A DNA stretch of 64,000 nucleotides from Octopus sinensis (lineage: Eukaryota): positions 3,844,001-3,908,000 of the forward strand of contig NC_043026.1 of assembly GCF_006345805.1 (NCBI RefSeq), read 5' to 3'. The position numbers and the translations under genes are program-made. The notes under the pieces were generated by a model, which saw nothing but the letters and a program-made list of their open reading frames with translations, was not told the DNA's origin and did no database searches. Shown here one piece after another: positions 1 through 55,918 of this stretch. Positions within the stretch are counted from its first letter, which is position 1. Each line of letters opens with the position of its first letter.

Positions 1-3000
1 TAAAAACCCCCTTTGGCCACGAATGACCATGGGATTGCCCCTAGAAAGTCTTCATCCGAGGCACAAGTCCAGCAAAGTTGTGTATGAATGACCAGCAGTT
101 GCCCATTCATACCAGCCTCCCCCTCTCCTTGCCATTATATTTACATGGGGTAAAGTCTAAAAACCCGCTTTGGCCACGAATGACAATGGGATTGCACCTA
201 AAAAGTTTTCATCCGAGGCACAAGTCCAGCAAAGTTGTGTATGAATGACCAGCAGTCACCCATTCATACCAGCCTCCCCCTCTCCATGCCATTAATATCT
301 ACATGGGGTAAAGTCTAAAAACCCCCTTTGGCCACGATGACCATGGGATTGCACCTAAAAAGTTTTCATCCGAGGCACAAGTCCAGCAAAGTTGTGTATG
401 AATGACCAGCAGTCACCCATTCATACCAGCCTCCCCCCTCTCCATGCCATTATATCTACATGGGGTAAAGTCTAAAAACCCCTTTGGCCACGAATGACCA
501 TGGGATTGCACCTAAAAAGTTTTCATCCGAGGCACAAGTCCAGCAAAGTTGTGTATGAATGACCAGCAGTTGCCCATTCATACCAGCCTCCCCTCTCCAT
601 GCCATTAATATCTACATGGGGTAAAGTCTAAAAACCCCCTTTGGCCACGAATGACCATGGGATTGCACCTAGAAAGTTTTCATCCGATGCACAAGTCCAG
701 CAAAGTTGTGTATGAATGACCAGCAGTCACCCATTCATACCAGCCTCCCCTCTCCATGCCATTAATATCTACATGGGGTAAAGTCTAAAAACCCCCTTTG
801 GCCACGAATGACCATGGGATTGCACCTAAAAAGTTTTCATCCGAGGCACAAGTCCAGCAAAGTTGTGTATGAATGACCAGCAGTCACCCATTCATACCAG
901 CCTCCCCCTCTCCATGCCATTAATATCTACATGGGGTAAAGTCTAAAAACCCCCTTTGGCCACGAATGACCATGGGATTGCACCTAAAAAGTTTTCATCC
1001 GAGGCACAAGTCCAGCAAAGTTGTGTATGAATGACCAGCAGTCACCCATTCATACCAGCCTCCCCCTCTCCATGCCATTAATATCTACATGGGGTAAAGT
1101 CTAAAAACCCCCTTTGGCCACGAATGACCATGGATTGCACCTAAAAAGTTTTCATCCGAGGCACAAGTCCAGCAAAGTTGTGTATGAATGACCAGCAGTC
1201 ACCCATTCATACCAGCCTCCCCCTCTCCTTGCCATTATATGTACATGGGGTAAAGTCTAAAAACCCCCTTTGGCCACGAATGACCATGGGATTGCACCTA
1301 GAAAGTTTTCATCCGAGGCACAAGTCCAGCAAAGTTGTGTATGAATGACCAGCAGTCACCCATTCATACCAGCCTCCCCCTCTCCATGCCATTAATATCT
1401 ACATGGGGTAAAGTCTAAAAACCCCCTTTGGCCACGAATGACCATGGGATTGCACCTAAAAAGTTTTCATCCGAGGCACAAGTCCAGCAAAGTTGTGTAT
1501 GAATGACCAGCAGTCACCCATTCATACCAGCCTCCCCCTCTCCATGCCATTAATATCTACATGGGGTAAAGTCTAAAAACCCCCTTTGGCCACGAATATG
1601 ACCATGGATTGCACCTAAAAAGTTTTCATCCGAGGCACAAGTCCAGCAAAGTTGTGTATGAATGAACAGCAGTCACCCATTCATACCAGCCTCCCCCTCT
1701 CCATGCCATTAATATCTACATGGGGTAAAGTCTAAAAACCCCCTTTGGCCACGAATGACCATGGGATTGCACCTAAAATGTTTTCATCCGAGGCACAAGT
1801 CCAGCAAAGTTGTGTATGAATGACCAGCAGTTGCCCATTCATACCAGCCTCCCCCTCTCCATGCCATTAATATCTACATGGGGTAAAGTCTAAAAACCCC
1901 CTTTGGCCACGAATGACCATGGGATTGCACCTAAAAAGTTTTCATCCGAGGCACAAGTCCAGCAAAGTTGTGTATGAATGACCAGCAGTCACCCATTCAT
2001 ACCAGCCTCCCCCTCTCCATGCCATTAATATCTACATGGGGTAAAGTCTAAAAACCCCCTTTGGCCACGAATGACCATGGGATTGCACCTAAAAAGTTTT
2101 CATCCGAGGCACAAGTCCAGCAAAGTTGTGTATGAATGACCAGCAGTTGCCCATTCATACCAGCCTCCCCCTCTCCATGCCATTAATATCTACATGGGGT
2201 AAAGTCTAAAAACCCCCTTTGGCCACGAATGACCATGGGATTGCACCTAGAAAGTTTTCATCCGATGCACAAGTCCAGCAAAGTTGTGTATGAATGACCA
2301 GCAGTCACCCATTCATACCAGCCTCCCCCTCTCCATGCCATTAATATCTACATGGGGTAAAGTCTAAAAACCCCCTTTGGCCACGAATGACCATGGGATT
2401 GCACCTAAAAAGTTTTCATCCGAGGCACAAGTCCAGCAAAGTTGTGTATGAATGACCAGCAGTCACCCATTCATACCAGCCTCCCCCTCTCCATGCCATT
2501 AATATCTACATGGGGTAAAGTCTAAAAACCCCTTTGGCCACGAATGACCATGGGATTGCACCTAAAAAGTTTTCATCCGAGGCACAAGTCCAGCAAAGTT
2601 GTGTATGAATGACCAGCAGTCACCCATTCATACCAGCCTCCCCCTCTCCATGCCATTAATATCTACATGGGGTAAAGTCTAAAAACCCCCTTTGGCCACG
2701 AATGACCATGGGATTGCACCTAAAAAGTTTTCATCCGAGGCACAAGTCCAGCAAAGTTGTGTATGAATGACCAGCAGTCACCCATTCATACCAGCCTCCC
2801 CCTCTCCATGCCATTAATATCTACATGGGGTAAAGTCTAAAAACCCCCTTTGGCCACGAATGACCATGGGATTGCACCTAAAAAGTTTTCATCCGAGGCA
2901 CAAGTCCAGCAAAGTTGTGTATGAATGACCAGCAGTCACCCATTCATACCAGCCTCCCCCTCTCCATGCCATTAATATCTACATGGGGTAAAGTCTAAAA

Positions 3001-4465
3001 AACCCCTTTGGCCACGAATGACCATGGGATTGCACCTAAAAAGTTTTCATCCGAGCACAAGTCCAGCAAAGTTGTGTATGAATGACCAGCAGTCACCCAT
3101 TCATACCAGCCTCCCCCTCTCCATGCCATTAATATCTACATGGGGTGGGTAAAGTCTAAAAACCCCCTTTGGCCACGAATGACCATGGGATTGCACCTAA
3201 AAAGTTTTCATCCGAGGCACAAGTCCAGCAAAGTTGTGTATGAATGACCAGCAGTCACCCATTCATACCAGCCTCCCCTCTCCATGCCATTAATATCTAC
3301 ATGGGGTAAAGTCTAAAAACCCCCTTTGGCCACGAATGACCATGGGATTGCACCTAAAAAGTTTTCATCCGAGGCACAAGTCCAGCAAAGTTGTTGTTAT
3401 GAATGACCAGCAGTTGCCCATTCATACCAGCCTCCCCCTCTCCATGCCATTAATATCTACATGGGGTAAAGTCTAAAAACCCCCTTTGGCCACGAATGAC
3501 CATGGGATTGCACCTAGAAAGTTTTCATCCGATGCACAAGTCCAGCAAAGTTGTGTATGAATGACCAGCAGTTGCCCATTCATACCAGCCTCCCCCTCTC
3601 CATGCCATTAATATCTACATGGGGTAAAGTCTAAAAACCCCCTTGGCCACGAATGACCATGGGATTGCACCTAAAAAGTTTTCATCCGATGCACAAGTCC
3701 AGCAAAGTTGTGTATGAATGACCAGCAGTCACCCATTCATACCAGCCTCCCCCTCTCCTTGCCATTATATGTACATGGGGTAAAGTCTAAAAAACCCCCT
3801 TGGCCACGAATGACCATGGGATTGCCCCTAGAAAGTTTCCATACGAGGCACAAGTCCAGCAAAGTTGTGTATGAATGACCAGCAGTCACCCATTCATACC
3901 AGCCTCCCCCTCTCCTTGCCATTATATGTACATGGGGTAAAGTCTAAAAACCCCCTTTGTCCACGAATGACCATGGGATTGCCCCTAGAAAGTTTCCATC
4001 CGAGGCACAAGTCCAGCAAAGTTGTGTATGAATGACCAGCAGTCGCCCATTCATACTAGCCTCCCCCTCTCCTTGCCATTATATGTACATGGGGTAAAGT
4101 CTAAAAACTCCCTTTGGCCACGAATGACCATGGGATTGCACCTAGAAAGTTTTCATCCGAGGCACAAGTCCAGCAAAGTTGTGTATGAATGACCAGCAGT
4201 CGCCCATTCATACCAGCCTCCCCCTCTCCTTGCCATTATATGTACATGGGGTAAAGTCTTAAAAACTCCCTTTGGCCAAAATGACCATGGGATTGCACCT
4301 AGAAAGTTTTCATCCGAGGCACAAGTCCAGCAAGTTGTGTATGAATGACCAGCAGTCGCCCATTCATACCAGCCTCCCCCTCTCCTTGCCATTATATGTA
4401 CATGGGATAAAGTCTAAAAACCCCCTTGGCCACGAATGACCATGGGATTGCCCCTAGAAAGTTCC
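1..4465. repeat. ~158-bp tandem satellite, ~28 copies, running off the left edge; intronic to GAK
   Basis: Unit TAAAAACCCCCTTTGGCCACGAATGACCATGGGATTGCACC...ACATGGGGTAAAGTC recurs at 1, 158, 316 and onward to ~4465. Confidence 0.97.
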
Positions 4466-5092
4466 CTTCCCAAAACATAGAATTAACCACAGGTCACTGC
4501 TCTGAGACTATCCTGTGAAGAAGTGTTGAGGGAAAGAGTGCAAGAGGCTACCAAAGATACGAGAGAATGGACTGGAAACAGGAGCCTGGTTGATCTGATT
4601 GCATGCAAGCAGTGCAACCCAGGGGACTGGAGTATCCTAGCAAATTGATCACTGGACACAGGGAGGGTACTGGTTGATGGTGATGGTTAGGTTTTACATC
4701 AGCTTTTCAATGCTGGCATCAGTTGGTTGGGTCTTTTTGAGTTACAGGGGTTTAGGAAACATTTGGAGACAGATAGAGGGAGGGAGACAGATACATAGAA
4801 ATAGGTGGATATATGGACATACAGAGACAGAGGCAGGGAGATCAACAGAGCTAGGGAGACCAAGGGAGACAGAAAGACAGAGATAGGGAGACTGGCAGAT
4901 ACAAGGAGAGAGAGAGAGAGTGAGATAATCAGTACAGGAAGTTTAACAGCAGGGATGCCCTTTCTGATGCCAGCATGGACAAATGCTGATCTTCTATAAA
5001 AAAAACCTAGCTGGACTTTTGTTTTTGGAAGCATTGAAATTGCATCGTATCGTACTTTCCTGTTTGCATGATGGATGCATTTGTTTTTGCAG

Positions 5093-5290
5093 GTGCTGGT
5101 GCATCGACTGGTGCCCCAGGCTGGCAACAGGCACCAAACAACCAGGCGCCGTCGTCTCCCAAGAAACAACAAACCCAACCAGCCGCGGGTGCGACACCAG
5201 CAGCACACAAAGCAGCTTTTGGACCTGGTTCCGGTCCTGGCCCGAGTGTTATTGGAAGCAGAGATGATAGAGGGACACGCAAGCCTTTTG
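5093..5290 (+). CDS. GAK: GAK/auxilin internal coding exon (198 nt, phase 1-1), low-complexity linker ending SVIGSRDDRGTRKPF
   Basis: TTTGTTTTTGCAG acceptor (AG 5091-92) and G|GTAAG donor (5291). SVIGSRDDRG resembles vertebrate GAK SVIGAREERG as recalled. In frame with the next exon. Confidence 0.85.
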
Positions 5291-5864
5291 GTAAGTTCCT
5301 TTGCTGGAGGGGAGAGTATAGGGTGACCCCTCTCTCTCTCTCTCTGTCCATGTCCTCTTCTCTGTAATCTTCATTCATCTCTCTATGTTTTATATGTTTG
5401 TCTCTGTACATGTTTATCTGTCTCCACGTCTGTCTGTCTGTCTTCCTGTATCTTATTATCTCCCTCTGTCACTCCCTTTGTATCTGCCAGTCTCCCTGTC
5501 TCCCTAGCCCTGTCTCCTTGTATATGTCTCTCATGTGTCCATCTGTCTCCTTTTGTCTATCTCTCTCTCCTTATGTCTGTCTCTCCTGTGTCCATCTGTC
5601 TCCTTATGTCTGTCTCCATATGTCCATTTCTATGCACCCGTCTGTCTCCAAATGTTTCCTAAACACTTGTAACCATTTGCCTTGAATGATTGAAAATGAC
5701 AACTATAACTGTCATTAAAACTATTCATAGTGAATGCTACTGGAGACATTTGCTGTTTCTGCTAACATTAAACATTTTCTGTGAATACAAGCATTGGGCA
5801 TTTACTGTAAATACTGTTGGGTGTGTTTACTACAAATGTTTATTTCCGATATACATCAATATGA

Positions 5865-6113
5865 TTACCTGTACATTATTTACATTAGACGGATATTTGT
5901 CCTCATCTTGTTTGTTGTTAACACAATATTTCGGCTGATATACCCACCAGCCTTCATCAGGTGTCTTGGGGAAATTTTGACCTGGGTTCTCATTCCTAAG
6001 GTATTTCTCGGTGTTGTTGTTGTTATTATTATTATTCAGGTCACTGCTTGGAATTGAACTCGGAATCTAGGGGTTAGTAGTCCATGCTCTTAACCACTAC
6101 GACATATTCCCAC
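5865..6113 (-). mobile_element. tRNA-derived SINE carrying a hammerhead motif (minus-strand copy)
   Basis: On the minus strand: A box (GTCGTAGTGG), B box (GAGTTCAATTCC), (AAT)n spacer, then a body matching 6112-6375. Confidence 0.8.
5920..5965 (-). ncRNA. Minimal type I hammerhead ribozyme motif, core intact
   Basis: Minus strand reads GACAC-CUGAUGA-A-GGCUG(loop)CAGCC-GAA-AUAU-U-GUGUU: stem I GACAC/GUGUU, stem II GGCUG/CAGCC, palindromic loop-less stem III AUAU, AUU cleavage triplet. Confidence 0.7.
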
Positions 6114-6375
6114 AGGCATATAGCATAGTGGTTAAGAGCACGGGCTACAAACCCGAAGATTCTGAGTTCGATTCCAGGCCATGACCTGAATAATGATAAT
6201 AATAATATAAAAAAATTGCTTAGGAATGAGAACCCAGGTTCAAAATTTCCCCGAGACACCTGATGAAGGCTGGAGGGTATATCAGCCGAAACACTGTGTT
6301 AACAACAAACAAGATGAGGACAAATATCCATTGAATTTAAATAATGTACATAATTCCTCATCTTTTAAATACAGA
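6112..6375 (+). mobile_element. tRNA-derived SINE carrying a hammerhead motif (plus-strand copy)
   Basis: TAGCATAGTGG A box, GAGTTCGATTCC B box, AAT-rich spacer, body with CTGATGA...GAAA. Confidence 0.8.
6255..6300 (+). ncRNA. Minimal hammerhead motif, degenerate stem III
   Basis: GACAC-CTGATGA-A-GGCTG...CAGCC-GAAACAC-T-GTGTT. Stems I and II are intact, but ACAC is not self-complementary and U16.1 is missing. Confidence 0.55.
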
Positions 6376-6545: not shown

Positions 6546-6685
6546 GCCCAAAACCTAAGGTGCATACTGACACTTTTGGAGACCTTCTTGGTGGATTTAG
6601 CTCCAAGAGAGCGAATGAACCACGGACTATAGGAGAAATGAGGAAAGACATTTTAGCTAAGGAAATGGACCCAGATAAACTTAAG
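6546..6685 (+). CDS. GAK: GAK/auxilin coding exon (140 nt): PKPKVHTDTFGDLLGGFSSKRANEPRTIGEMRKDILAKEMDPDKLK
   Basis: TTTTCATTGCAG acceptor, AAG|GTAAG donor, phase 1 to 0. Matches the pre-J-domain segment of GAK/auxilin (KPKV..FEDLL...TIAEMRK..LAK..DP.KLK). Confidence 0.93.
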
Positions 6686-6990: not shown

Positions 6991-7878
6991 TTTAAAATAA
7001 TCCTTATTGTAGATGTGTGGCTGTGTGCTAAGATGCTTGCTTTGCAATCTGTGAAGAGCACGTGGTGTTACTTAAGTGCACTGCCATCTAATGTCCAGTT
7101 GCCTAATACCTAATGTGAAATCAGTTTGTAAGATCAGCTGAAATGGATCTATTAATACTGTATACTTTGATTAGTATGGGAACACCCTAACGCAGCTAAT
7201 ATAAACTCAACAAGTAACATTTCACCAAGCACTAACATTCACACACATATATGCACACATACACACATATATACACGCATACACACATATATACACACAT
7301 ATTCATACGCTCGCACATATACACATGCATATGTATACACACACGTTTCCACATGCATATGTATACGTGTATATATACACACATACACATACATACATGA
7401 ACATATGTATATATATATATACACACATACATACATGCACATATGTATATATATATATACACACATACATACATGCACATATGTATATATATATATACAC
7501 ACACATACACATATGCACATATGTGTATATATATATATTATATATATATATATATATATATGCGTGTGTGTGTGTGTTTGTCCCCCTAGCATTGCTTGAC
7601 TACCGATGCTGGTGTGTTTATGTCCCCGTTACTTAGCGGTTCGGCAAAAGAGACCGATAGAATAAGTACCGGGCTTACAAAAAGAATAAGTCCTGGGGTC
7701 GAGAGTTGCTCGATTAAAGGCGGTGCTCCAGCATGGCCGCAGTCAAATGACTGAAACAAGTAAAAGAGTAGAGTATATATAACACATATGCACACACACA
7801 CACACTCACATCTACACACACACATATGTATATATACACATACATACACACATATATGCACGTGAACGCATACACACT

Positions 7879-8025: not shown

Positions 8026-8818
8026 TAGGCGCAGGAGTGGCTGTGTGGTAAGTAGCTTGTTTACCAACCACATGGTTCCGGGTTCAGTCCCACTGCGTGG
8101 CACCTTGGGCAAGTGTCTTCTACTATAGCCTCGGGCCGACCAAAGCCTTGTGAGTGGATTTGGTAGACGGAAACCAAAAGAAGCCTGTCATATATATGTA
8201 TCTCTCTCTATATAAACGGCAGTTTGTGTGTCTGTCAGGTTGTGCCCTCACCCTGACCACGGCTTTCAACCGATTCTGATGAAACTTGACACACACATAG
8301 CCCAATGTCATAATTCAAAACTAACGCAGTGAAAATTTTGAAAAGTTCCCCCAGTTCTGAAAAAAATTGATAAATTCGACATGGGGTCGAGAATCTAAGC
8401 TTTTTATATGCAACACATTTTCTGTCGGGAGACAGCTAGGAACATCGTATACACAGAAGTATTCGAGTGAAGAGAAGACATTGCAACCTACACATGCGCC
8501 TTCGTTCCCTAGAGGGAAAGGACTAGATTGGGATTAGTCGTTGCCTATTAGGGGCTCTTACATACCCGGGCAACGCCGGGCTATGCTGCTAGTATATATA
8601 TATGCATGTGTGTGTTTGTGTGTCTGTGTTTGTTCCCCTAGCATTGCATGACAACCGATGCTGGTGTGTTTATGTCCCCGTTACCTAGCGGTTCGGCAAA
8701 AGAGACCGATAGAATAAGTACTGGGCTTACAAAAGAATAAGTCCTGGGGTCGAGTTGCTCGATTAAAGGCGGTGCTCCAGCATGGCCGCAGTCAAATGAC
8801 TGAAACAAGTAAAAGAGT
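8026..8818 (+). mobile_element. Abundant tRNA-derived SINE ('family A'); representative copy, Helitron-interrupted
   Basis: Head GGCGCAGGAGTGGCTGTGTGGTAAG...GGGTTCAGTCCC, central (TA)n/(TG)n, tail ...GTCAAATGACTGAAACAAGTAAAAGA. Other full or partial copies at ~7561, 10837, 15470, 16407, 17697, 19062, 20480, 24401, 24592, 32572, 42745 (-), 49865, 53125, 57148. Confidence 0.85.
8201..8592 (+). mobile_element. Non-autonomous Helitron-like element (second family) inserted in the central (TA)n of a SINE
   Basis: A|TCTCTC start, CCCGGGCAACGCCGGG hairpin, CTAG|T end. SINE halves flank it (8026-8200, 8593-8818). Confidence 0.8.
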
Positions 8819-8861
8819 ATATGAGTATACATGGGTTGTTTTTTTTTTTTACATCTTTCAG

Positions 8862-9038
8862 ATAATGGAGTGGACCAAGGGTAAAGAACGTAACATCCGT
8901 GCACTGCTGTGTTCACTCCATACTGTGCTTTGGGATGAAGAGATGCGTTGGAAGGAATGTGGGATGCACGAACTGGTCAGTCCGGAGCAGGTGAAGAAGG
9001 TCTACAGGAAAGCCGTTCTGTCTGTTCATCCAGACAAG
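8862..9038 (+). CDS. GAK: GAK/auxilin J-domain exon (177 nt): [59 protein letters not shown]
   Basis: Long polypyrimidine tract plus CAG acceptor, AAG|GTAAG donor, phase 0-0. Contains the auxilin signature [10 protein letters not shown] and the J-domain HPD motif. Confidence 0.97.
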
Positions 9039-12552: not shown

Positions 12553-12654
12553 CTAACAGGAACGCCACATGAAGCGCTGGCCAAGTTGATATTCATGGAG
12601 CTGAACGATGCCTGGGCCGAGTTTGAAGAGAAAGGAATGCAGTCGTTGTATTAG
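12553..12654 (+). CDS. GAK: GAK/auxilin terminal coding exon: [33 protein letters not shown]
   Basis: TTCTACTTCCAG acceptor, phase 0, IFMELNDAW motif of the auxilin J-domain helix, TAG stop at 12652-12654. Confidence 0.95.
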
Positions 12655-14635: not shown

Positions 14636-16737
14636 GAAGGAAAATTAAAAGCTGTGTAAACTTGGTTAATTAAAAGATAATTGCTGTTAATAATTTGGTG
14701 TTCAACTTGTTAATTTTTTTTTTTCTTGTTTTGTTACCTGAATCTTCTCCTCCCCACCACTTTCTGGCATCTTTGTTATGGCCCCTAGGGGTTAAGGCAT
14801 AGCTGTTGTTTAGCCCTTGGATCAGTGCTGGTGATGCTGACCCCATGATCATGAATGTTTTAGATATTGCCAAACTGTTTTTTTTTTATTTTCTTATTAC
14901 TATTATCATCATGGCCAGCCTCGCCTGGCACCTGTGCAGGTGGCACATAAAAACTACACTCACGGAATGGTTGGCGTTAGGAAGGGCATCCAGCTGTAGA
15001 AACACTGCCAGATCAGACTGGGCCTGGGGCAGCCTTCTGGCTTCCCAGACCTCAGTTGAACCCTCCAACCCATGCTAGCATGGAAAACGGATGTTAAACG
15101 ATGATGATGATGATATAAGCGTAGGAGTGTGATACATAGCTTGCTTACCAACCACAGGGTTCCAGGTTCCTATAAAGAGATTTCCCACATCTCTCTGTGT
15201 GTATATATATTATATTGTGTGAAATTTGATTTAGTATTTCTAAATTGGATTTTTTTCCCTGTAAGTTTGGATTTATATACCCTCAAATAATTATATATAT
15301 TTATATGTAAGTATGGCTGTGTGATAAGAAACTTGCGACACTGAGAATGAACGAATGGATCTGGGTTCAATCTCATCGTGTGGTGATTTAAGTGTCTCCT
15401 ATAGCCAACAAAGCTTTGTGAGTGGATTTAGTAAATGGAGACAAAGAAACTCGTTATATATATATAAGGTGGTCTGGCTGTGTGGTAAGCAGCTTGCTTT
15501 CCAACCACATGGTTCCAGGTTCAGTCCCCACTGTGTGGCACCTTGGGCAAGTGCCTTCTATAGCCTCAGGCCGACCATAGCCTTATGGGTGGATTTGGTA
15601 GAGGAAAACTGAAAGAAGCCTGTCACATATATATATGTTTGTGTGTCTGTGTTTGTCCCCCCAACATCGCTTGACAACTGATGCTGGTGTGCTTATGTCT
15701 CTGTAGCTTAGTAGTTCAGCAAAAGAGACCGATAGGATAAATACTAGACTTACAAAGAATAAGTCCTGGGGTCGATTCGTTCAACTAAAGTCGGTGCTCC
15801 AGCATGGCCGCAGTCAAATGACCGAAACATATTAAAGAATACGTGAAACTATTCGATATGTATTGTGGTCCTTAAACAGAAACATATAAGACTCTTACCA
15901 GATGGAGTGCTCTCTTCGTTAAATTATACACAAATCAATATCATCATCTTGTACCTCTATCTCTCTCTCTCTCTCCCTTGTTCTTCCCTCTGGTTGGGTA
16001 GCCAGGTATCTCCCCCACAGCAGCACACCTGTATCTCTGCCTGTTATGTTTTAATACAGAATTATTAATTTGGATTATATTACTCGAATGCAAGCCAATA
16101 ATGGAGTTAATACGTGAGCAAATACAACGCAATATATACTCAAAAATGCACGCTGATTAAAAAAAAAATAAGCCAAACCTAAAGATCCAGGTGCAAAAAG
16201 GTGTGGATAAGGTATTAACCCTCTTACAATTTTACAATTGTTCCAATTTAACACACATAATGAGGTGATGAAACCTGTAAAGGGAACTGGTTGCCTCTTT
16301 ACACTTTTGGGGTGCATCTTGGGTGCAACACAATTTCCTTTCTTTTTGTTTCTAGAAACTACCAGTCAGGAATGAAACGCAAGTTTAAAAATATATATGG
16401 CATATTGGGCAAGTGTTTTCTGCTATAACCCCGGGCCGACCAATGCCTTGTGAGTGGATTTGGTAGATGGAAACTGAAAGAAGCCTGTCGTATATATGTA
16501 TATATGTGTGTCTGTGTTTTTTTTGTGTGTCTGTGTTTGTCCCCCTAGCATTGCTTGACAACCGATGCTGGTGTGTTTACGTCCCCATCACCTAGCGGTT
16601 CGGCAAAAGAGACCGATAGAATAAGTACTGGGCTTACAAAGAATAAGTCCCGGGGTCGAGTTGCTTGACTAAAGGCGGTGCCCCAGCATGGCCGCAGTCA
16701 AATGACTGAAACAAGTAAAAGATAAAAGATAAAAGAT

Positions 16738-19061: not shown

Positions 19062-19626
19062 TAGGCGCAGGAGTGGCTGTGTGGTAAGAAGCTTGCTAAC
19101 CAACCACATGGTTCCGGGTCCAATCCCACTGCGTGGCATCTTGGGCAAGTGTCTTCTGCTATAGCCCTGGGCCGACCAATGCCTTGTGAGTGGATTTGGT
19201 AGACGGAAACTGAAAGAAGCCCGTCGTATATATGTATATATATATGTATGTGTGTTTGTGTTTGTCCCCCTAGCATTGCTTGACAACCGATGCTGGTGTG
19301 TTTATGTCCCCGTTACTTAGCGGTTCGGCAAAAGAGACCGATAGAATAAGTACTGGGCTTACAAAGAATAAGTCCCGGGTTCGAGTTGCTCGATTAAAGG
19401 CGGTGCTCCAGCATGGCCGCAGTCAAATGACTGAAACAAGTAAAAGAGTAAAGAGTATAAGGTGGTCTGGCTGTGTGGTAAGTAGCTTGCTTACCAACCA
19501 CATGGTTCCGGGTTCAGTCCCACTGCGTGGCATCTTGGGCAAGTGTCTTCTATAGCCTCGGGCCGACCATAGCCTTATGAGTTGATTTTGTAGAGGGAAA
19601 CTGAAAGAAACCTGTCGCATATATAT

Positions 19627-28673: not shown

Positions 28674-31600
28674 CAGCAATCCCTTGCCATGTCGCAGTTC
28701 ACCTGTCATGGTTCACCTGTCACGGTTCACCTGTCACGGTTCACCTATCGCAGTTTATTTTTTAAGCTTACATTGATTGCACTGTGGTGTTATTTTGCAT
28801 TTATAATAAAGTATACACAAACTGTGACATATATTTGTCATTTAGATATGGCTAACCCCTAAGGGTGGATGCTACTGTAGTTTGTAACCCCAGGAGGACA
28901 CCTCCTCCAGCTGGTTATAGACACACTTTCTGTGCCCTATCAGTATTTGCAAAGGGCGCCCCAGGAGGACACCTGCTCCAGCTGGCTATAGACACACTTT
29001 CTGTGCCCTATCAGTATTTGCAAAGGGTACCCCAGAAGGACACCTCTTCCAGCTGGCTATAGACACACTTTCTGTGCCCTATCAGTATTTGCAAGGGGTT
29101 CCCCAAAAGGACACCTCCTCCAGCCGGCTATAGACACACTTTCTGTGCCCTATCAGTATTTGCAAAGGGTTCCCCAGGAGGACACCTCCTCCAGCCGGCT
29201 ATAGACACACTTTCTGTGCCCTATCAATATTTACAAGGGGTTCTTATTCTGTTAGTCTCTTTTTGCAAAGGGCTTCCGTTTGCAAATACTGATAGGGCAC
29301 AGAAAGTGTGTCTATAGCCAGCTGGAGCAGGTGTCCTCCTGGAGCGCCCTTTGCAAATACTGATAAGGCACAGAAAATGTGTCTATAGCCGGCTGGAGGA
29401 GGTGTCCTCCTGGGGAACCCTTTGCAAATACTGATAGGGCACAGAAAGTGTGTCTATAGCTGGCTGGAGGAGGTGTCCTCCTGGGGCACCCTTTGCAAAT
29501 ACTGATAGGGCACAGAAAGTGTGTCTGTAGCCAGCTGGAGGAGGTGTCCTCCTGGGGAACCCTTTGCAAATACTGATAGGGCACAGAAAGTGTGTCTATA
29601 GCCAGCTGGAGGAGGTGTCCTCCTGGGGCGCCCTTTGCAATTATTGATAGGGCACACAGAAAGTGTGTCTATAGCCAGCTGGAGGAGGTGGTCCTGGGGC
29701 ACCCTTTGCAAATACTGATAGGGCACAGAAAGTGTGTCTATAGCCAGCTGGAGCAGGTGTCCTCCTGGGGCGCCCTTTGCAAATACTGATAGGGCACAGA
29801 GAGTGTGTCTATAGCCGGCTGGAGGAGGTGTCCTCCTGGGGAACCCTTTGCAAATACTGATAGGGCACAGAAAGTGTGTCTATAGCCAGCTGGAGGAGGT
29901 GTCCTCCTGGGGCGCTCTTTGCAAATACTGATAGGGCACAGAAAGTGTGTCTATAGCCAGCTGGAGGAGGTGTCCTTCTGGGGTACCCTTTGCAAATACT
30001 GATAGGGCACAGAAAGTGTGTCTATAGCCGGCTGGAGGAGGTGTCCTCCTGGGGCACCCTTTGCAAATACTGATAGGGCACAGAAAGTGTGTCTGTAGCC
30101 AGCTGGAGGAGGTGTCCTCCTGGGGAACCCTTTGCAAATACTGATAGGGCACAGAAAGTGTGTCTATAGCCAGCTGGAGGAGGTGTCCTCCTGGGGCGCC
30201 CTTTGCAATTATTGATAGGGCACAGAAAGTGTGTCTATAGCCAGCTGGAGCAGGTGTCCTCCTGGGGCACCCTTTGCAAATACTGATAGGGCACAGAAAG
30301 TGTGTCTATAGCCAGCTGGAGCAGGTGTCCTCCTGGGGCACCCTTTGCAAATACTGATAGGGCACAGAAAGTGTGTCTATAGCCAGCTGGAGCAGGTGTC
30401 CTCCTGGGGCGCCCTTTGCAAATACTGATAGGGCACAGAAAGTGTGTCTATAGCCGGCTGGAGGAGGTGTCCTCCTGGGGAACCCCTTGCAAATACTGAT
30501 AGGGCACAGAAAGTGTGTCTATAGCCAGCTGGAGGAGGTGTCCTCCTGGGGCGCTCTTTGCAAATACTGATAGGGCACAGAAAGTGTGTCTATAGCCAGC
30601 TGGAGCAGGTGTCCTCCTGGGGCGCCCTTTGCAAATACTGATAGGGCACAGAAAGTGTGTCTATAGCCGGCTGGAGGAGGTGTCCTCCTGGGGAACCCTT
30701 TGCAAATACTGATAGGGCACAGAAAGTGTGTCTATAGCCGGCTGGAGGAGGTGTCCTCCTGGGGCACCCTTTGCAAATACTGATAGGGCACAGAAAGTGT
30801 GTCTGTAGCCAGCTGGAGGAGGTGTCCTCCTGGGGAACCCTTTGCAAATACTGATAGGGCACAGAAAGTGTGTCTATAGCCGGCTGGAGGAGGTGTCCTC
30901 CTGGGGGCACACCTTTGCAAATACTGATAGGGCAAGAAAGTGTGTCTGTAGCCGGCTGGAGGAGGTGTCCTCCTGGGGAACCCCTTGCAAATACTGATAG
31001 GGCACAGAAAGTGTGTCTATAAGCCGGCTGGAGGAGGTGTCCTCTGGGGAACCCTTTGCAAATACTGATAGGGCACAGAAAGTGTGTCTATAGCCGGCTG
31101 GAGGAGGTGTCCTCCTGGGGCACCCTTTGCAAATACTGATAGGGCACAGAAAGTGTGTCTGTAGCCAGCTGGAGGAGGTGTCCTCCTGGGGAACCCTTTG
31201 CAAATACTGATAGGGCACAGAAAGTGTGTCTATAGCCGGCTGGAGGAGGTGTCCTCCTGGGGCGCCCTTTGCAATTATTGATAGGGCACAGAAAGTGTGT
31301 CTATAGCCAGCTGGAGCAGGTGTCCTCCTGGGGCACCCTTTGCAAATACTGATAGGGCACAGAAAGTGTGTCTATAGCCAGCTGGAGCAGGTGTCCTCCT
31401 GGGGCGCCCTTTGCAAATACTGATAGGGCACAGAAAGTGTGTCTATAGCCAGCTGGAGGAGGTGTCCTCCTGGGGAACCCTTTGCAAATACTGATAGGGC
31501 ACAGAAAGTGTGTCTATAGCCAGCTGGAGGAGGTGTCCTCCTGGGGCGCTCTTTGCAAATACTGATAGGGCACAGAAAGTGTGTCTATAGCCAGCTGGAG

Positions 31601-32483
31601 GAGGTGTCCTTCTGGGGTACCCTTTGCAAATACTGATAGGGCACAGAAAGTGTGTCTATAGCCAGCTGGAGCAGATGTCCTCCTGGGGTGCCCTTTGCAA
31701 ATACTGATAGGGCACAGAAAGTGTGTCTATAGCCGGCTGGAGGAGGTGTCCTCCTGGGGAACCCTTTGCAAATACTGATAGGGCACAGAAAGTGTGTCTA
31801 TAGCCAGCTGGAGCAGGTGTCCTCCTGGAGCGCCCTTTGCAAATACTGATAGGACACAGAAAGTGTGTCTATAGCCAGCTGGAGCAGGTGTCCTCCTGGG
31901 GCGCTCTTTGCAAATACTGATAGGGCACAGAAAGTGTGTCTATAGCCAGCTGGAGGATGTGTCCTCCTGGGGCGCTCTTTGCAAATACTGATAGGGCACA
32001 GAAAGTGTGTCTATAGCCGGCTGGAGGATGTGTCCTCCTGGGGCGCCCTTTGCAAATACTGATAGGGCACAGAAAGTGTGTCTATAGCCAGCTGGAGCAG
32101 GTGTCCTCCTGGGGCGCCCTTTGCAAATACTGATAGGGCAAAGAAAGTGTGTCTATAGCCAGCTGGAGCAGGTGTCCTCCTGGGGCGCCCTTTGCAAATA
32201 CTGATAGGGCACAGAAAGTGTGTCTATGGCCAGCTGGAGGAGGTGTCCTCCTGGGGCTACAACTACAGTAGCATCCACCCTTAGGGGTTAGCCATATTTA
32301 AATGGCAAATATACATCATGATGTGTTGTAGCTACTGTTTATAACTCGCTCTGAGATTTATTATACACAAATTATAAAAGCCATAAAAGAAATATACAGT
32401 ACAGTACTGATTCTGTTTCGTGGATTTTCACCTATCGCAGGGGGTTTTGGAAGGTAATACTCATGATAGTTGAGGGATTACTG
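28674..32483. mobile_element. pogo/Tigger-like non-autonomous element (TA TSD) containing a 71-bp tandem array in two opposite orientations
   Basis: TA|CAGCAATCCCTT ... GAGGGATTACTG|TA. Inner inverted arms at 28829-28888 and 32254-32313. Confidence 0.6.
28885..32258. repeat. 71-bp tandem array: ~5 forward units (to ~29240) then ~42 reverse units (from ~29280)
   Basis: Unit CCAGGAGGACACCTCCTCCAGCTGGCTATAGACACACTTTCTGTGCCCTATCAGTATTTGCAAAGGGxxCC and its reverse complement. Confidence 0.97.
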
Positions 32484-39436: not shown

Positions 39437-40703
39437 CGAGGGACGTTCAATAAGTAATGCCTCTGACCCACTTCCAGGTGTTTGATCTAGTTGAAATTTT
39501 GCATGTACAATTACTTATATCTCTATAGATTAGGTGGCAAATTACAGCTCTGAACTAATTGTGGTTTCTGATTTACAGGTGTTTGAACTGAGTCAAGTGT
39601 GAAATTGGGAGCCTGTTGAGTGTCGAGCAGTGATCCAGTTTTGTATTTGAAGGACGCCACACCACAGGAGACTTTTGATGAAATGAAAGTAACTTATGGT
39701 GATGATGCCCCATCATATGACCTTGTAAAACGCTGGCATCGTGAATTCAAACATGGTCGGAACTCTGTGGAAACAGCTCCCAGATCTGGTCAACCCCCTT
39801 CTGCCATTGATGAGGCATCTGTCCGTCAAGTTGAGGCTGCCATTTTGGAAGGTCAATGCATAACTATTCGCCAAATAGCCCATGAGGTCAAGATTAGTAC
39901 CGGGTCAGTGGAAACTATCATTCATGACCATTTGCATATGCAAAAGGTGTCTGCCTTTCCAGAAGCAAGAACGCGTCGAGTGCTCGAGGATGAATTTGGA
40001 GACATGCCAAGAAGATGAGTCAAACTTTTTCAAAAGACTGATTACACAGGGTAAAACCTGGGTCCATCACTATGATCCAGAGATCAAAGCCCAGTCAATG
40101 CAGTGGAAGCACCGTGACTCACCTCCTCCAAAGAAGGCAAGGGTGCAGCCCTCTGCTGGCAAGGTCATGCTCACAGTCTTCTGGGACCAGGACGGAGTAG
40201 TGATGACAGATTTCCTGGCAAAGGGTACCACAATTACAGGAGCCTATTATGCTTCACTTTTGAGGAAATTATGAGAACCTATCAAAATCAAGAGGTGGGG
40301 CAAGATCAGCAAAGGCATCCTCCTCCTGCAGGACAACGCTCTGGTCCACAACTCGCGTGTCGTCAGATCAGAAGCACAGGCGTGCTGCTATGAACTCCTC
40401 CCCCATCCCCCCTACGCTCCTGACCTTGCACCCTCTGATTTTCACCTCTTCCCAGCCATGAAGTTTTTTTGAAAGGAAAGCATTTCACAGATGATGCAGC
40501 CTTGATTTCTAAAGTCACGTCGTGGTTGGAGGACCAAGCTGGGGTCTTCTACAAAAACGGTCTCCAGCACTGCATCAAACGATGGCAGAAATGCGTAACT
40601 CTGGGTGGTTCCTATGTAGAAAAAGACTAATAACTGTGCCAAGTTTCGTTGCTCTACTGCTATGGGAAGTGGGTCAGGGGCATTACTTATTGAACGCCCC
40701 TCA
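39437..40703 (+). mobile_element. Near full-length mariner transposon (1267 bp, ~39-bp TIRs, TA TSD)
   Basis: TA|CGAGGGACGTTCAATAAGTAATGCCTCTGACCCACTTCC ... GGAAGTGGGTCAGGGGCATTACTTATTGAACGCCCCTCA|TA. Confidence 0.95.
39606..40630 (+). pseudogene. Mariner (DD34D-type) transposase pseudogene
   Basis: HTH region, WVHHYDPE, KVMLTVFWD, LLQDNA and HPPYAPDLAPSDFHLF motifs. Frameshifts, an in-frame TGA, loss of the WVPRLL linker and a mutated first catalytic Asp. Confidence 0.93.
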
Positions 40704-42210: not shown

Positions 42211-43373
42211 CTACGCATTTCGCCCGGTGTGCTAACGTTTCTGCCAGTTCTCCGCTATCACTTACACCACCCCTACCACCATCAAGTGGCCCGCAGTGGC
42301 AGAGGCCTGTCCCACACAGAACTTTTCTGGTTACTTTTAGGTATCCCCTCATGCATATTTATGCTATGTTCATTTACACACCAGGAAATAAAGTGGCTAA
42401 CTGGCTTCCGTGCCGGTGGCACATAAAAAGCACCATTCGAGCGTGATCGTTACTACCATAGCTTTACTGGCACGTGAAAAAACATTCAAGCGAGGTCGTT
42501 GCCAGTGCCGCTGGTCTGGCTCCTGTTCAGGTGGCATGTAAAAAAAACACCATTTGAGCCTGGCCGTTGCCAGTACCGCCTGACTGGCCCTCGTGCCAGT
42601 GGCACGTTAAACACCCACTACACTCTCGGAGTGGTTGGCGTTAGGAAGCCTGGTGCAGCCTCCTGGCTTCCCAGACCCCGGTCGAACCATCCAACCCATG
42701 CTAGCATGGAAAAACGGATGTTAAACGATGGTGATGTGCTCTTTTACTCGTTTCAATCATTTGACTGCGGCCATGCTGGAGCACCGCCTTTAGTCGAGCA
42801 AATTGACCCCGGGACTTATTCTTTGTAAGCCCAGTACTTATTCTATCGGTCTCTTTTGCCGAACCGTAAAGTGACGGGGACGTCAACACACCAGCATCGG
42901 TTGTCAAGCAATGCTAGGGAGACAAACACAGACACACAAACACACACACGCATATATATACATATATACGATGGGCTTCTTTCAGTTTCCGTCTACCAAA
43001 TCCACTCACAAGGCATTGGTCGGGCCCGAGGCTATAGTAGAAGACACTTGCCAAGGTGCCACGCAGTGGGACTGAACCCAGAACCATGTGTTGGTTAGCA
43101 AGCTACTTACCACACAGCCACTCCTGCGGCCTATTATATCTATATATATATATATATATATAAAACAGACTTCTTTCAGTTTCCAGTTACCAAATTTACA
43201 CACGAGGCTTTGATTGGCCCAGAGCTATAGCAGAAGATGATTCCATAATGTACCACCCAACAGGACTGGACCTAAAATCACGTGTGTTGAGAAACAAACT
43301 TGTGAACTGATTTACTTGTGCTTCATCCACAGAAAAGACACTCGACAGATTTGTATATCATATTTCTGGCTTG

Positions 43374-43756
43374 TGGAGGTGCAGTGGCCCAGTGGTTAGG
43401 GCAGCGGACTCGCGGTCACAGGATCGTGGTCTCGATTCCCAGACCGGGCGTTGTGAGTGTTTATTGAGCGAAAACACCTAAAGCTCCACGAGGCTCCGAC
43501 AGGGGATGGTGGTGATCCCTGCTGTACTCTTTCACCACAACTTTCTCTCACTCTTACTTCCTGTTTCTGTTGTACCTGTATTTCAAAGGGCCGGCCTTGT
43601 CACTCTCTCTGTCACGCTGAATATCCCCGAGAACTACGTTAAGGGTACACGTGTCTGTGGAGTGCTCAGCCACTTACACGTTAATTTCACGAGCAGGCTG
43701 TTCCGTTGATTCGGATCAACCGGAACCCTCGTCGTCGTAACCGACGGAGTGCTTCC
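43374..43756 (+). mobile_element. tRNA-derived SINE ('family B')
   Basis: GTGGAGGTGCAGTGGCCCAGTGGTTAGGGC..GGTCTCGATTCCC head. Inverted copy at 44570-44951; relatives at ~12145, 37120 (-), 37455. Confidence 0.85.
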
Positions 43757-43900
43757 ATTTCCATTTCTGGCTTACAGGCTGAATTTTTCAGACCAAAATT
43801 TACAACCAAAGAAATGGTAGATTGACTTATACACCAAAACAACTTTGGAGGATCAAAACTTCCATGCGAAAACGCTGACAATGTTTGAACGTTTATACTA

Positions 43901-44390
43901 TGAGGGGGTACCCCAAACGAAACCGGAATTTTGCAATATTTTATTCACTTAGTTTTATACGTTTACACTTTTATGGCCTTCGAAATATTTTCCATTTGAA
44001 GCAATGCATCAGTCCAGGCATGTTTTCCAATGTTCGAAGCAGTGCTGGAACTCTTGCGAATTGATGCCTTGTAAAGCGTCCATCATTTGTTACTTCACCT
44101 CTTCTACATTTGCAAATTCTGTAGCACCAGCATTTGTCACCAGTGATGGCCTTCGAGAAAAGGTCCGGATCAACTTCAAGCTGTTCTTTCAGTTCACGAC
44201 ACGTATTCAGTTGAGACTGCCTTTGATCTTCCGTGAGCAAGCGAGGCACAAGTTTTGCTGCAACTCTTTTCATTTGCAGTTCCTCACTCAAAATTCGTTG
44301 GCAGGAGCTCCAGAATTCACCAGTCATATCAACAAGTTTGTCAATTGTTTAGTGACAGTCTTTCAAGATCAGTTCATGAATTTTCTTGAT
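43901..44390 (-). pseudogene. Internally deleted mariner transposase remnant with one TIR
   Basis: KRVAAKLVPRLLTEDQ...FSKAITGDKCWCY joined directly to the C-terminal helix region. End GGGGTACCCCCTCA|TA at 43901. Confidence 0.8.
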
Positions 44391-44569
44391 GTTGTAGTGG
44401 CACAAGCAGCCAACACCATATTGGATGAGATCTCGTGGAAGCCATGCAAGAGGTCACAACAAGGCTCGCGATGGAAAACTATATAAAGGGAAAACCCGAT
44501 TTAGATCTCTCTCTTTTTGGCGCCACTTTGTGAACACCACCACCACTGGCTGGTCCTGCCCTATATGTG

Positions 44570-44951
44570 GAAGCACTCCGTCGGTTACGACGACGAGGGT
44601 TCCGGTTGATCCGATCAACGGAACAGCCTGCTCGTGAAATTAACGTGTAAGTGGCTGAGCACTCCACAGACACGTGTACCCTTAACGTAGTTCTCGGGGA
44701 TATTCAGCGTGACACAGAGAGTGACAAGGCCGGCCCTTTGAAATACAGGTACAACAGAAAAAGGAAGTAAGAGTGAGAGAAAGTTGTAGTGAAAGAGTAC
44801 AGCAGGGATCACCACCATCCCTGCCAGAGCCTCGTGGAGCTTTTAGATGTTTTCGCTCAATAAACACTCACAACGCCCGGTCTGGGAATCGAAACTGCGA
44901 TCCTATGACCGCGAGTCCGCTGCCCTAACCACTGGGCCATTGCGCCTCCAC
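44570..44951 (-). mobile_element. tRNA-derived SINE ('family B'), inverted relative to 43374-43756
   Basis: Reverse-complement match over ~380 bp. Confidence 0.85.
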
Positions 44952-50005: not shown

Positions 50006-50039
<34 letters not shown>

Positions 50040-55799: not shown

Positions 55800-55806
55800 A
55801 GACAGG

Positions 55807-55838
<32 letters not shown>

Positions 55839-55839
55839 C

Positions 55840-55918
<79 letters not shown>

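What the first reader, a model, noticed from the sequence alone, without database searches (positions are those of the whole stretch)
4750..5664. Inverted repeat arms bracket a frame-symmetric GAK exon: circRNA, exon-skipping or editing candidate
Seen: 4750-4941 and 5442-5664 are imperfect reverse complements, with exact blocks of 24 bp (4750-4773 vs 5641-5664) and 20 bp (4885-4904 vs 5478-5497) plus 14/15 and ~17/20 blocks in the correct nested order. They match no TE I recognise here. The ~500-nt loop holds the whole 198-nt exon with both splice sites. The exon is phase 1-1 and a multiple of 3, so skipping keeps frame, and a back-spliced circle (junction G+GT = Gly) would have a stop-free reading frame. 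Established: flanking intronic complementarity promotes back-splicing and loop-out skipping, forms ADAR substrates, and coleoid cephalopods have very extensive A-to-I editing. Inference: an RNA-structure switch controlling the length of the GAK linker before the J domain.
Basis: partly seen in the sequence, partly recalled or inferred. Interest (0 to 1): 0.75.

Follow-up and report, generated by a model that had tools for sequence, protein, structure and literature searches.

The report
Inverted intron repeats bracketing GAK exon
Two inverted copies of a roughly 200-base, purine-rich low-complexity sequence sit in the introns on either side of one exon of a GAK/auxilin gene and could loop that exon out in the RNA, but nothing here shows this is more than a young, probably neutral duplication of a well-known kind.

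Summary
Left arm 4741-4941 and right arm 5442-5673 are colinear reverse complements. Their three non-repetitive anchor blocks (24-nt and 20-nt exact matches, plus a 21-column inner end) occur nowhere else in the 64 kb. The arms bracket a 198-nt, phase 1-1 exon (5093-5290) of an auxilin/GAK-type gene, 151 nt from the exon on each side. As RNA, the region is predicted to fold into a ~165-bp imperfect duplex (z -13), and neither arm folds on its own.

About 60% of the duplex energy comes from composition alone (purine-rich against pyrimidine-rich). The anchors are 93% identical, about the same as the window's interspersed repeats, and only the microsatellite-like middle has decayed. No selection is therefore needed to explain the exact blocks. 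Other inverted-repeat loops cover about 7% of the window, so one of four exons being bracketed by chance has a probability of about 0.25. Published octopus data report few circRNAs and mostly intronic editing.

My best reading is a lineage-specific inverted duplicate that probably forms an intronic ADAR substrate and yields at most minor back-splicing or exon skipping. A regulated "switch" is unsupported. No cephalopod orthologues or RNA data could be reached, so function remains untested. Interest is low to moderate.

The parts
4741..4941 (+). Left arm: 201 nt, 77% purine. It has unique end anchors (GTTACAGGGGTTTAGGAAACATTTGG... and ...GAGATAATCAGTACAGGAAG) around a degenerate GGAGACAGA-like microsatellite. 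It lies in the intron upstream of exon A and ends 151 nt before the 3' splice site.
   Evidence: Alignment to the reverse complement of the right arm. Anchors unique in the window. Composition. No self-structure: -13 kcal/mol alone.
5442..5673 (-). Right arm, homologous part: 232 nt, 76% pyrimidine on the + strand. It is an inverted copy of the left arm, expanded by local tandem duplication (53-nt period at 5513-5616). It starts 151 nt after the 5' splice site.
   Evidence: It is part of the only pyrimidine-rich tract on the + strand of the whole window. Alone it folds at only -8.8 kcal/mol.
5327..5441 (+). CT-rich low-complexity extension of the right arm towards the exon. It is not homologous to the left arm by colinear alignment, but it can pair with the left arm's (GA)n stretch in alternative registers.
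   Evidence: Sequence. Inverted pairs I17 and I25, 4901-4924 / 5330-5353. Composition.
5093..5290 (+). Exon A of the auxilin/GAK-type gene: 198 nt, phase 1-1, encoding the low-complexity linker that ends ...SVIGSRDDRGTRKPFG. Splice sites are ttgcag|GT and TTG|gtaagt.
   Evidence: Sequence, translation. The last 15 residues align to bovine auxilin 1N4C. The next exon continues the frame.
4942..5092 (+). Upstream half of the loop: 151 nt holding the branch-point region, polypyrimidine tract and 3' splice site.
   Evidence: No complementarity to the downstream half.
5291..5441 (+). Downstream half of the loop: 151 nt holding the 5' splice site. It is mostly the CT-rich extension.
4696..4722 (+). 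Small inverted repeat, left half. Its 13-nt perfect core is ATGCTGGCATCAG at 4710-4722. Together with 4964-4992 it brackets only the left arm and could form a competing local stem.
   Evidence: I21; two matches only, 0.07 expected per window.
4964..4992 (-). Small inverted repeat, right half (core 4964-4976).
6546..6685 (+). Exon B: 140 nt, phase 1 to 0 (GPKPKVHTDTFGDLLGGFSS...MDPDKLK). It would be the acceptor exon if exon A were skipped.
   Evidence: tblastn, sequence.
8862..9038 (+). Exon C: first part of the J domain (...VHPDK).
12553..12654 (+). Exon D: last coding exon ([33 protein letters not shown], stop at 12652-12654).

Best explanation
**What it is.** A lineage-specific inverted duplication. 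Two copies of one discrete segment of about 200-230 bp lie in opposite orientation in the two introns flanking a constitutive-looking exon of the single auxilin/GAK-type gene. Each copy has unique ends around a purine-rich, slippage-prone microsatellite core.

**How it likely works (inferred).**
- The sense transcript carries an almost pure-purine arm and, about 700 nt later, an almost pure-pyrimidine arm.
- Neither arm can fold on itself, so both stay available and zip into an imperfect duplex of about 165 bp. This loops out 500 nt holding the exon and both of its splice sites.
- The main consequence is probably that the arms act as an intronic ADAR substrate. The left arm has 82 A, 65 of them predicted paired. 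Editing or unwinding then lets ordinary linear splicing proceed.
- Back-splicing to a 198-nt circle and in-frame skipping are plausible minor by-products.
- I do not think it is a selected switch.

**Shown versus inferred.** Shown here: the repeat, its boundaries, the exon phase, the predicted pairing and the uniqueness in the window. Inferred: pairing in vivo, editing, circle formation and neutrality.
For: **The repeat is real.**
- Colinear gapped alignment with discrete boundaries.
- Anchors unique in the window.
- Predicted fold of 4735-5680 is -383 kcal/mol, against -290 +/- 7 for shuffles (z -13.3).
- Inter-arm ddG is -213 kcal/mol; the arms alone give -13 and -8.8.
- The predicted duplex has 165 pairs, 13 of them G-U, with helices of 25 and 27 bp.
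- It is the only cross-exon inverted match in the visible GAK introns, and the right arm is the only pyrimidine-rich tract in the window.

**The evidence points to neutrality.**
- Anchors are 70/75 = 93% identical. Pairwise identity of the window's interspersed repeat copies is about 92%.
- The arm middles are about 68% identical, with indels and a 53-nt tandem duplication.
- A shuffled right arm still gives -131 +/- 8 kcal/mol.
- Five other non-microsatellite inverted-repeat loops make 7% of window positions 'bracketed', so P(at least 1 of 4 exons) is about 0.25.
- A much stronger 240-bp hairpin sits in the same intron, so such structures are commonplace here.

**Literature.** In octopus, editing is mostly in intronic and 3'UTR hairpins, circRNAs are few (296), and ADAR is expected to antagonise them (PMC9699675).
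Against: - No RNA data could be consulted, so pairing, editing and circle formation in vivo are untested.
- Purine-rich and CU-rich single strands are typical binding sites for SR proteins and PTB-type proteins (my own knowledge). These could prevent pairing altogether.
- 39 of the 82 left-arm A have a 5' G, which ADARs disfavour (the preference itself is from my own knowledge).
- The exon is exactly centred in the loop (151/151 nt), and this is the sole cross-exon pair in the gene's visible part. Both facts are mildly unexpected under pure chance.
- Neutrality is argued from a single genome. No close relative was available.
Confidence: 0.55

Rival explanations
1. Functional RNA-structure switch. 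Arm pairing is selected to loop out the exon. It would produce a regulated 66-residue-shorter GAK isoform and/or a functional 198-nt circRNA, with ADAR editing of the arms tuning the ratio.
For: - The geometry meets the known sufficiency rules for back-splicing (PMC4201285).
- The exon is phase 1-1 and the next exon starts in phase 1, so skipping keeps the frame.
- It is the only cross-exon complementarity in the visible gene.
- The arms have no self-structure, which maximises long-range pairing.
- The exon is exactly centred in the loop.
- The circle is stop-free in two frames, one of them with an AUG.
Against: - There is no transcript evidence and no conservation evidence.
- The identity pattern fits neutral decay.
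- 60% of the pairing energy is compositional.
- Low-complexity repeats and G-U-containing repeats can inhibit circularisation (PMC4201285).
- Octopus circRNAs are rare and low in abundance (PMC9699675).
- The splice sites are strong, and a semi-conserved motif would be lost on skipping.
- No inverted repeat was found near the corresponding exon in a distant relative (L002).
- The GAK frame of the circle has no AUG.
Confidence: 0.08
2. Two independent insertions of a low- or middle-copy mobile element (SINE- or MITE-like, with a microsatellite core) landed by chance in opposite orientation on either side of the exon. They have no consequence for the RNA, because proteins coat the arms or splicing is faster than pairing.
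For: - Both copies share the same sharp 5' and 3' boundaries.
- Anchor divergence is like that of the window's interspersed repeats.
- The window is 44% repeats with distant copies and holds several other inverted-repeat pairs.
- The chance of a bracket is about 0.07 per exon.
Against: - There is no third copy of any anchor in 64 kb, whereas the abundant families occur 10-28 times.
- No target-site duplications are visible at either arm (reading).
- No tRNA-like head and no Rfam match in the arms.
- No terminal inverted repeats are shared by both copies.
- The 24-mer is absent from the metagenome, prokaryote and viral collections, but those would not hold this genome anyway.
Confidence: 0.27
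3. The relevant level is DNA, not RNA. The polypurine and polypyrimidine tracts in inverted arrangement form H-DNA, cruciform or R-loop structures. These would pause polymerases and so affect transcription elongation or genome stability at this exon.
For: The arms show strong purine/pyrimidine strand asymmetry (77% and 24% purine). Slippage and tandem duplication within the arms show instability.
Against: The tracts are interrupted by many C/T or G/A interruptions rather than being long mirror repeats. Nothing here tests DNA structure. A 500-bp spacer makes cruciform extrusion unlikely (my own knowledge).
Confidence: 0.05
4. Assembly artefact: a fold-back chimera created during sequencing or assembly.
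For: Fold-back artefacts are known in long-read data (my own knowledge). The window holds several palindromic structures.
Against: - The arms are diverged: 93% identity in the anchors, about 68% overall, with indels and different lengths (201 and 232 nt).
- They enclose a non-palindromic 500-nt loop with an intact, correctly phased, conserved exon.
- Artefactual fold-backs are near-perfect palindromes.
Confidence: 0.02

Closest known systems
Exons circularised through flanking inverted repeats, such as human ZKSCAN1 and HIPK3 with inverted Alu elements, Drosophila laccase2 with inverted repeats, and mouse Sry (PMC4201285, PMC4617980)
   Same: Canonical splice sites sit inside a loop closed by reverse-complementary sequences in the two flanking introns. 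Complementarity is far above the 30-40 nt shown to be sufficient. The arms are within about 150 nt of the splice sites, and no competing cross-exon pair is visible.
   Different: - No back-splice product has been observed here.
- The arms are not a recognised dispersed repeat. They are a purine-rich / pyrimidine-rich low-complexity pair whose pairing is largely compositional.
- G-U wobbles and low-complexity repeats were reported to inhibit circularisation.
- The exon is short, at 198 nt.
Intronic inverted-repeat dsRNA as a promiscuous ADAR substrate, with ADAR antagonising circRNA formation (Ivanov 2015 and Rybak-Wolf 2015, as cited in PMC9699675)
   Same: A long imperfect intramolecular duplex of about 165 bp, with helices of 25 and 27 bp, in the introns of a gene. 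Published octopus editing is concentrated in intronic and 3'UTR hairpins.
   Different: Editing was not observed here. One strand carries nearly all the adenosines (82 against 29), so editing would be strongly one-sided. About half of those A have the disfavoured 5' G.
Long-range intronic RNA pairing that regulates cassette or mutually exclusive exons, such as FGFR2 IAS2-ISAR and Dscam docking/selector sites (my own knowledge)
   Same: Complementary intronic elements on both sides of a frame-symmetric exon could alter its inclusion.
   Different: The known cases are short, conserved elements with documented alternative splicing and covariation. Here there is no evidence of alternative splicing or conservation, and the arms look like a young duplicate.

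Membership tests
Inverted-repeat-driven circRNA locus | Exon(s) with canonical 3' and 5' splice sites between the repeats | tested here: met
   ttgcag|GT at 5093 and TTG|gtaagt at 5290/5291, both inside the 500-nt loop.
Inverted-repeat-driven circRNA locus | Reverse-complementary sequences of at least about 30-40 nt in the upstream and downstream flanking introns | tested here: met
   Arms of 201 and 232 nt. 165 predicted pairs, with helices of 25 and 27 bp. The threshold is from PMC4201285.
Inverted-repeat-driven circRNA locus | Pairing across the exon is favoured over pairing within one intron | tested here: inconclusive
   The arms have no self-structure and are the only cross-exon pair in the visible introns. 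Only a 13-19-bp local stem competes. However, the upstream intron runs off the window, so more distant competitors cannot be excluded.
Inverted-repeat-driven circRNA locus | Observed back-splice junction (reads, RNase R resistance) | not testable with these tools
   No RNA-seq access. No mention of GAK or auxilin in the held supplements of the octopus circRNA survey, which is uninformative.
Long intronic dsRNA ADAR substrate | Stable intramolecular duplex tens to hundreds of bp long | tested here: met
   Prediction only: z -13.3 for the region, ddG -213 kcal/mol between the arms.
Long intronic dsRNA ADAR substrate | Clusters of A-to-G differences between RNA and DNA | not testable with these tools
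   No transcript data.
Dispersed transposable element pair (SINE/MITE) | Further copies elsewhere in the genome | tested here: inconclusive
   No other copy of any anchor in 64 kb, although the abundant families recur 10-28 times. The rest of the genome is not available.
Dispersed transposable element pair (SINE/MITE) | Target-site duplications at each copy | tested here: not met
   Left copy flanks are ...CTTTTTGA / TTTAACAG.... Right copy flanks, in its own orientation, are ...GGCAAATG / ACAGACAG.... No direct repeat is present (reading).
Dispersed transposable element pair (SINE/MITE) | Diagnostic ends: a tRNA-type pol III head (SINE) or terminal inverted repeats shared by both copies (MITE) | tested here: not met
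   ARAGORN finds no tRNA-like sequence and there is no Rfam match in the arms. The small inverted repeat flanks the left copy only.
Conserved RNA-pairing splicing switch | Conservation or covariation of the pairing in orthologues | not testable with these tools
   No cephalopod GAK is held in the protein collection. Only distant relatives were reached (L001-L003). In L002 the corresponding coding region is split differently, and no inverted repeat of at least 18 nt lies within 2.4 kb.
Auxilin/GAK family (gene identity) | C-terminal J domain with HPD, preceded by a clathrin-binding linker | tested here: met
   E = 1.5e-53 to bovine auxilin 1N4C over exons A (end) to D. HPDK lies at the end of exon C. 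The kinase and PTEN parts lie outside the window, so GAK cannot be told from auxilin here. A bivalve locus shows kinase + PTEN_C2 directly upstream of the J domain.

The most novel reading that the evidence does not exclude
The inverted arms are a selected, ADAR-tunable RNA clamp. Where editing is low they pair, and the exon is either skipped, giving a GAK lacking 66 linker residues including the SVIGxR..RG motif, or back-spliced into a 198-nt circle. That circle has an AUG-initiated, stop-free reading frame (frame 0) that could be translated round and round. Where ADAR is high, the clamp is melted and full-length GAK is made. This would couple the clathrin-uncoating machinery to neural editing activity.
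Probability: 0.05. Interest if true: 0.65.

Novelty: new member of a known kind. Interest (0 to 1): 0.22.

Why it matters
If the arms pair in vivo, this locus would be a compact natural test case for how very active RNA editing interacts with inverted-repeat-driven back-splicing and exon skipping. The animals concerned have few reported circRNAs, and the gene is central to clathrin uncoating at synapses.

The purine-only and pyrimidine-only composition of the arms is a useful detail. Such arms cannot self-fold, and they pair largely regardless of exact sequence. This may make the type of repeat unusually robust as a long-range RNA clamp.

As it stands, the finding is an ordinary candidate of a well-known class, without evidence of function.

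Tried and rejected
**Orthologue search.**
- The exon-A peptide gave no hits in the protein collection.
- The J-domain exon gave only short fragments from non-cephalopod relatives, at most 86% identity.
- An exact look-up of the window's own J-domain ORF found nothing on record.
- I therefore did not spend the third protein search or the representative search on this.

**Scans for the 24-mer anchor.** Metagenome, prokaryote-genome and viral collections all returned 0. These are uninformative, because they do not hold this genome.

**Distant loci L001-L003.**
- Exon A could not be placed in L001 or L003.
- In L002 the region has a different exon structure and no inverted repeat.
- This is weak negative evidence only.

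**Other searches.**
- Rfam gave only sub-threshold miRNA-like hits, all in TA/CA microsatellites at 7.2-7.9 and 10.1-10.6 kb, and none in the arms.
- A literature search for 'circGAK' returned 0 papers. A search for octopus inverted repeats with editing found nothing specific.

**Ideas rejected.**
- The whole 4741-5673 stretch is not one palindrome, because the loop halves share nothing.
- The arms are not Helitron-like and not tRNA-SINE-like.
- The arm similarity is not chance similarity of two microsatellites. Unique anchors lie at both ends in the right order, and the right arm is the only CT-rich tract in 64 kb.
Full report

Yes. Region 4741-4941 aligns colinearly, with gaps, to the reverse complement of 5442-5673. 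The local score is 107, against 22 +/- 3.4 for shuffles, with 0 of 500 shuffles reaching it.

The 24-mer GTTTAGGAAACATTTGGAGACAGA lies at 4750-4773 and, inverted, at 5641-5664. The 20-mer AGGGAGACTGGCAGATACAA lies at 4885-4904 and 5478-5497. Each occurs only at those two places in the window, even with three mismatches allowed, against 0.00 expected by chance. A third anchor, GAGATAAT.AG.TACAGGAAG, forms the inner end of both arms.

Homology ends sharply at both ends of both copies. The two halves of the loop, and the outer flanks, show no complementarity beyond chance.

- The arms reach 4741 and 5673. A CT-rich tract continues from the right arm inward to about 5327, only 37 nt after the 5' splice site.
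- The interior of the arms is a degenerate GGAGACAGA-type microsatellite. It matches unrelated GA/TAGA tracts at 55.8-61.1 kb almost as well as it matches its partner (65 against 94 bits). The case for true homology therefore rests on the unique anchors and their order, not on the bulk of the arms.

**2. The exon and the gene.**

The exon is 5093-5290 (198 nt), bounded by ttgcag|GT and TTG|gtaagt. It is phase 1-1.

I mapped the remaining 3' exons on the + strand:

| Exon | Coordinates | Notes |
|---|---|---|
| B | 6546-6685 | phase 1 to 0 |
| C | 8862-9038 | J domain, ends ...VHPDK |
| D | 12553-12654 | stop at 12652 |

Joined together, they match bovine auxilin (PDB 1N4C) at E = 1.5e-53. The gene is therefore the auxilin/GAK-type co-chaperone.

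The kinase and PTEN parts lie upstream of the window, so 'GAK' as opposed to 'auxilin' cannot be shown here. A bivalve locus does have kinase + PTEN_C2 directly upstream of the J domain.

Skipping exon A would join two phase-1 boundaries and keep the frame. A second frame is also stop-free and does contain one AUG. The exon is open in several frames on both strands, as expected for GC-rich low-complexity coding sequence, so I attach little weight to this.

The cephalopod origin could not be verified. The closest proteins the collection holds are mollusc fragments at 86% identity or less.

**3. What would the RNA do?**

Folded as RNA, 4735-5680 gives -383 kcal/mol, against -290 +/- 7 for dinucleotide shuffles (z -13.3). 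The arms pair along their whole length.

The predicted inter-arm duplex has 165 pairs, 13 of them G-U. It contains uninterrupted helices of 25 bp (4750-4774 / 5640-5664) and 27 bp (4880-4906 / 5476-5502).

One feature deserves note. The left arm is 77% purine and the right arm 76% pyrimidine, so neither can fold on itself (-13.0 and -8.8 kcal/mol alone). Together they gain -213 kcal/mol.

The same composition also means that most of this energy needs no homology:
- A dinucleotide-shuffled right arm still gives -131 +/- 8 kcal/mol.
- The reverse complements of unrelated GA tracts give -90 to -140 kcal/mol.

Homology thus adds about 80 kcal/mol (z -9.7) on top of a large compositional baseline.

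Within the visible transcription unit the arms are each other's only partners:
- They are the only inverted match between any two GAK introns in the window.
- The right arm is the only pyrimidine-rich tract on the + strand in all 64 kb.
- The one local competitor is a small inverted repeat (13 nt perfect, about 19 bp with an interruption) at 4696-4722 / 4964-4992, which brackets the left arm alone.

**4. Origin, and whether selection is needed.**

The sharp common boundaries indicate two copies of one discrete segment.

I found no sign that the segment belongs to a dispersed family:
- There is no third copy of any anchor in 64 kb. By contrast, 44% of the window consists of repeats with distant copies, some present 10-28 times.
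- There are no target-site duplications (reading).
- There is no tRNA-like head and no Rfam family match.
- No terminal inverted repeats are shared by both copies.

A low-copy element cannot be excluded without the genome.

The identity pattern argues against invoking selection. The non-repetitive anchors are 70/75 = 93% identical, much like the roughly 92% pairwise identity of the window's interspersed repeat copies. The microsatellite-like middle is about 68% identical, with many indels and a 53-nt tandem duplication in the right arm. That is what slippage-prone sequence does when left alone. The long exact blocks are simply the parts that cannot slip.

**5. How surprising is it that an exon is bracketed?**

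The window is dense with inverted repeats. Five other non-microsatellite pairs with loops of 0.6-1.9 kb make about 7% of all positions 'inside a loop' for a 198-nt segment. The chance that at least one of the four visible exons is bracketed is therefore about 0.25.

The same intron also holds a far stronger structure. Positions 5863-6355 form a near-perfect 240-bp hairpin made of two head-to-head tRNA-like repeat copies (-333 kcal/mol, z -41).

One oddity remains unexplained. The exon is exactly centred, with 151 nt on each side. The a priori chance of that is about 1 in 300. The boundaries are fuzzy by a few bases, and this is one of many coincidences that could have been noticed.

**6. Comparison with what is known.**

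The architecture matches the class of exons circularised through flanking intronic complementarity. In that class, 30-40 nt of inverted repeat next to the splice sites suffice.

The same study shows that not every repeat pair works, that stronger hairpins can inhibit, and that G-U wobbles and low-complexity sequence reduce circularisation (PMC4201285).

In Octopus vulgaris a multi-tissue survey reported the following (PMC9699675):
- Only 296 high-confidence circRNAs were found, most of them in a single tissue.
- Back-splicing showed no departure from other invertebrates.
- A-to-I editing was mostly in introns and 3'UTRs, where hairpins are enriched.
- ADAR was expected to antagonise back-splicing.

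GAK or auxilin is not mentioned in the supplements held for that paper, which is uninformative.

The exon has consensus splice sites. It also encodes a motif (SVIGSRDDRG) that aligns weakly with bovine auxilin and recurs in another lophotrochozoan, which speaks for constitutive inclusion.

**7. Orthologues.**

This would be the decisive test, and I could not run it. No cephalopod GAK sequence is reachable.

Three distant loci were fetched. In L002 the corresponding coding region is divided differently between exons, and no inverted repeat of 18 nt or more lies within 2.4 kb. In L001 and L003 the exon could not be placed. This is weak negative evidence at best, because the arms look young.

**8. 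Verdict.**

The inferred 'switch controlling the GAK linker' is unsupported.

My best explanation (confidence about 0.55) is a lineage-specific, probably neutral inverted duplicate. In the pre-mRNA it most likely forms an imperfect 165-bp duplex that serves mainly as an intronic ADAR substrate, with back-splicing or skipping as minor by-products at most.

The main rival (about 0.27) is two chance insertions of a low-copy element with no RNA consequence. A selected switch gets about 0.08.

The finding is a new instance of a known kind, and its interest is low to moderate.

Noticed in passing
window 5863-6355: A near-perfect hairpin of about 240 bp (RNA MFE -333 kcal/mol, z -41). It is made of two head-to-head copies of a tRNA-like element with A/B-box-like motifs (TAGTGGTTAAGAG ... 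GAGTTCGATTCCAGG). It lies in the same intron as the right arm, about 570 nt downstream of the exon. It is a much stronger dsRNA, editing or small-RNA candidate than the reported arms.
   Followed up: partly
window 1-4463: A 157-bp satellite with 28 copies at 97% identity fills the visible part of the intron upstream of the exon and runs off the window start. Each unit carries a small internal palindrome, GTATGAATG...CATTCATAC.
   Followed up: no
window 8592-8829 and at least 12 other sites (e.g. 7541-7780, 16495-16722, 19226-19459, 50030-50267, 57320-57559): An interspersed repeat of about 240 nt at roughly 92% pairwise identity. Of the 13 other copies, 12 lie in the same (+) orientation, a strong orientation bias. 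No inverted pair of it flanks any GAK exon.
   Followed up: partly
window 4942-5092 and 5291-5441: The exon is exactly centred between the homologous parts of the arms (151 nt on each side, loop 500 nt), although the two loop halves share no sequence. This is unexplained and possibly coincidence.
   Followed up: partly
window 4696-4722 and 4964-4992: A small inverted repeat (13 nt perfect core, ATGCTGGCATCAG) brackets only the left arm. About 0.07 such matches are expected per window. It has no counterpart at the right arm.
   Followed up: partly
window 5093-5290: A circle made of this exon would be stop-free in two frames. The non-GAK frame contains the only AUG (MIEGHASLLVLVHRL...), so it would be formally an endless ORF. 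The exon is also open on the opposite strand, so this is probably a composition effect.
   Followed up: partly
window 39620-40274: Remnants of a mariner-type transposase, with the Mos1 HTH_48 domain and Transposase_1 at E = 1.2e-20, split over two frames.
   Followed up: partly
window 43373-43757 / 44568-44951 and 52408-52840 / 53878-54314: Two long inverted-repeat pairs (about 385 nt at 96% and about 435 nt at 93%) with loops of 0.8-1.0 kb. The first pair encloses ORFs at 43971-44486 that had no Pfam match.
   Followed up: no
window 28888-29243 and 29279-32257: Arrays of a 71-bp satellite in opposite orientations abut head to head at about 29260.
   Followed up: no
window 55800-61240: A 5-kb block of purine-rich microsatellites (TAGA, GA and a 53-nt unit), all with the purine strand on +. 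The right arm at 5316-5664 is the only pyrimidine-rich tract on the + strand of the whole window.
   Followed up: partly
L002 13250-13441 (-): In an unidentified ENA assembly (ERZ25069863, 2.2-Mb contig) carrying a GAK-like 3' end, an ORF with a HAUS3_C domain lies about 2.5 kb downstream of the gene's last exon on the opposite strand. This may be microsynteny worth checking.
   Followed up: no
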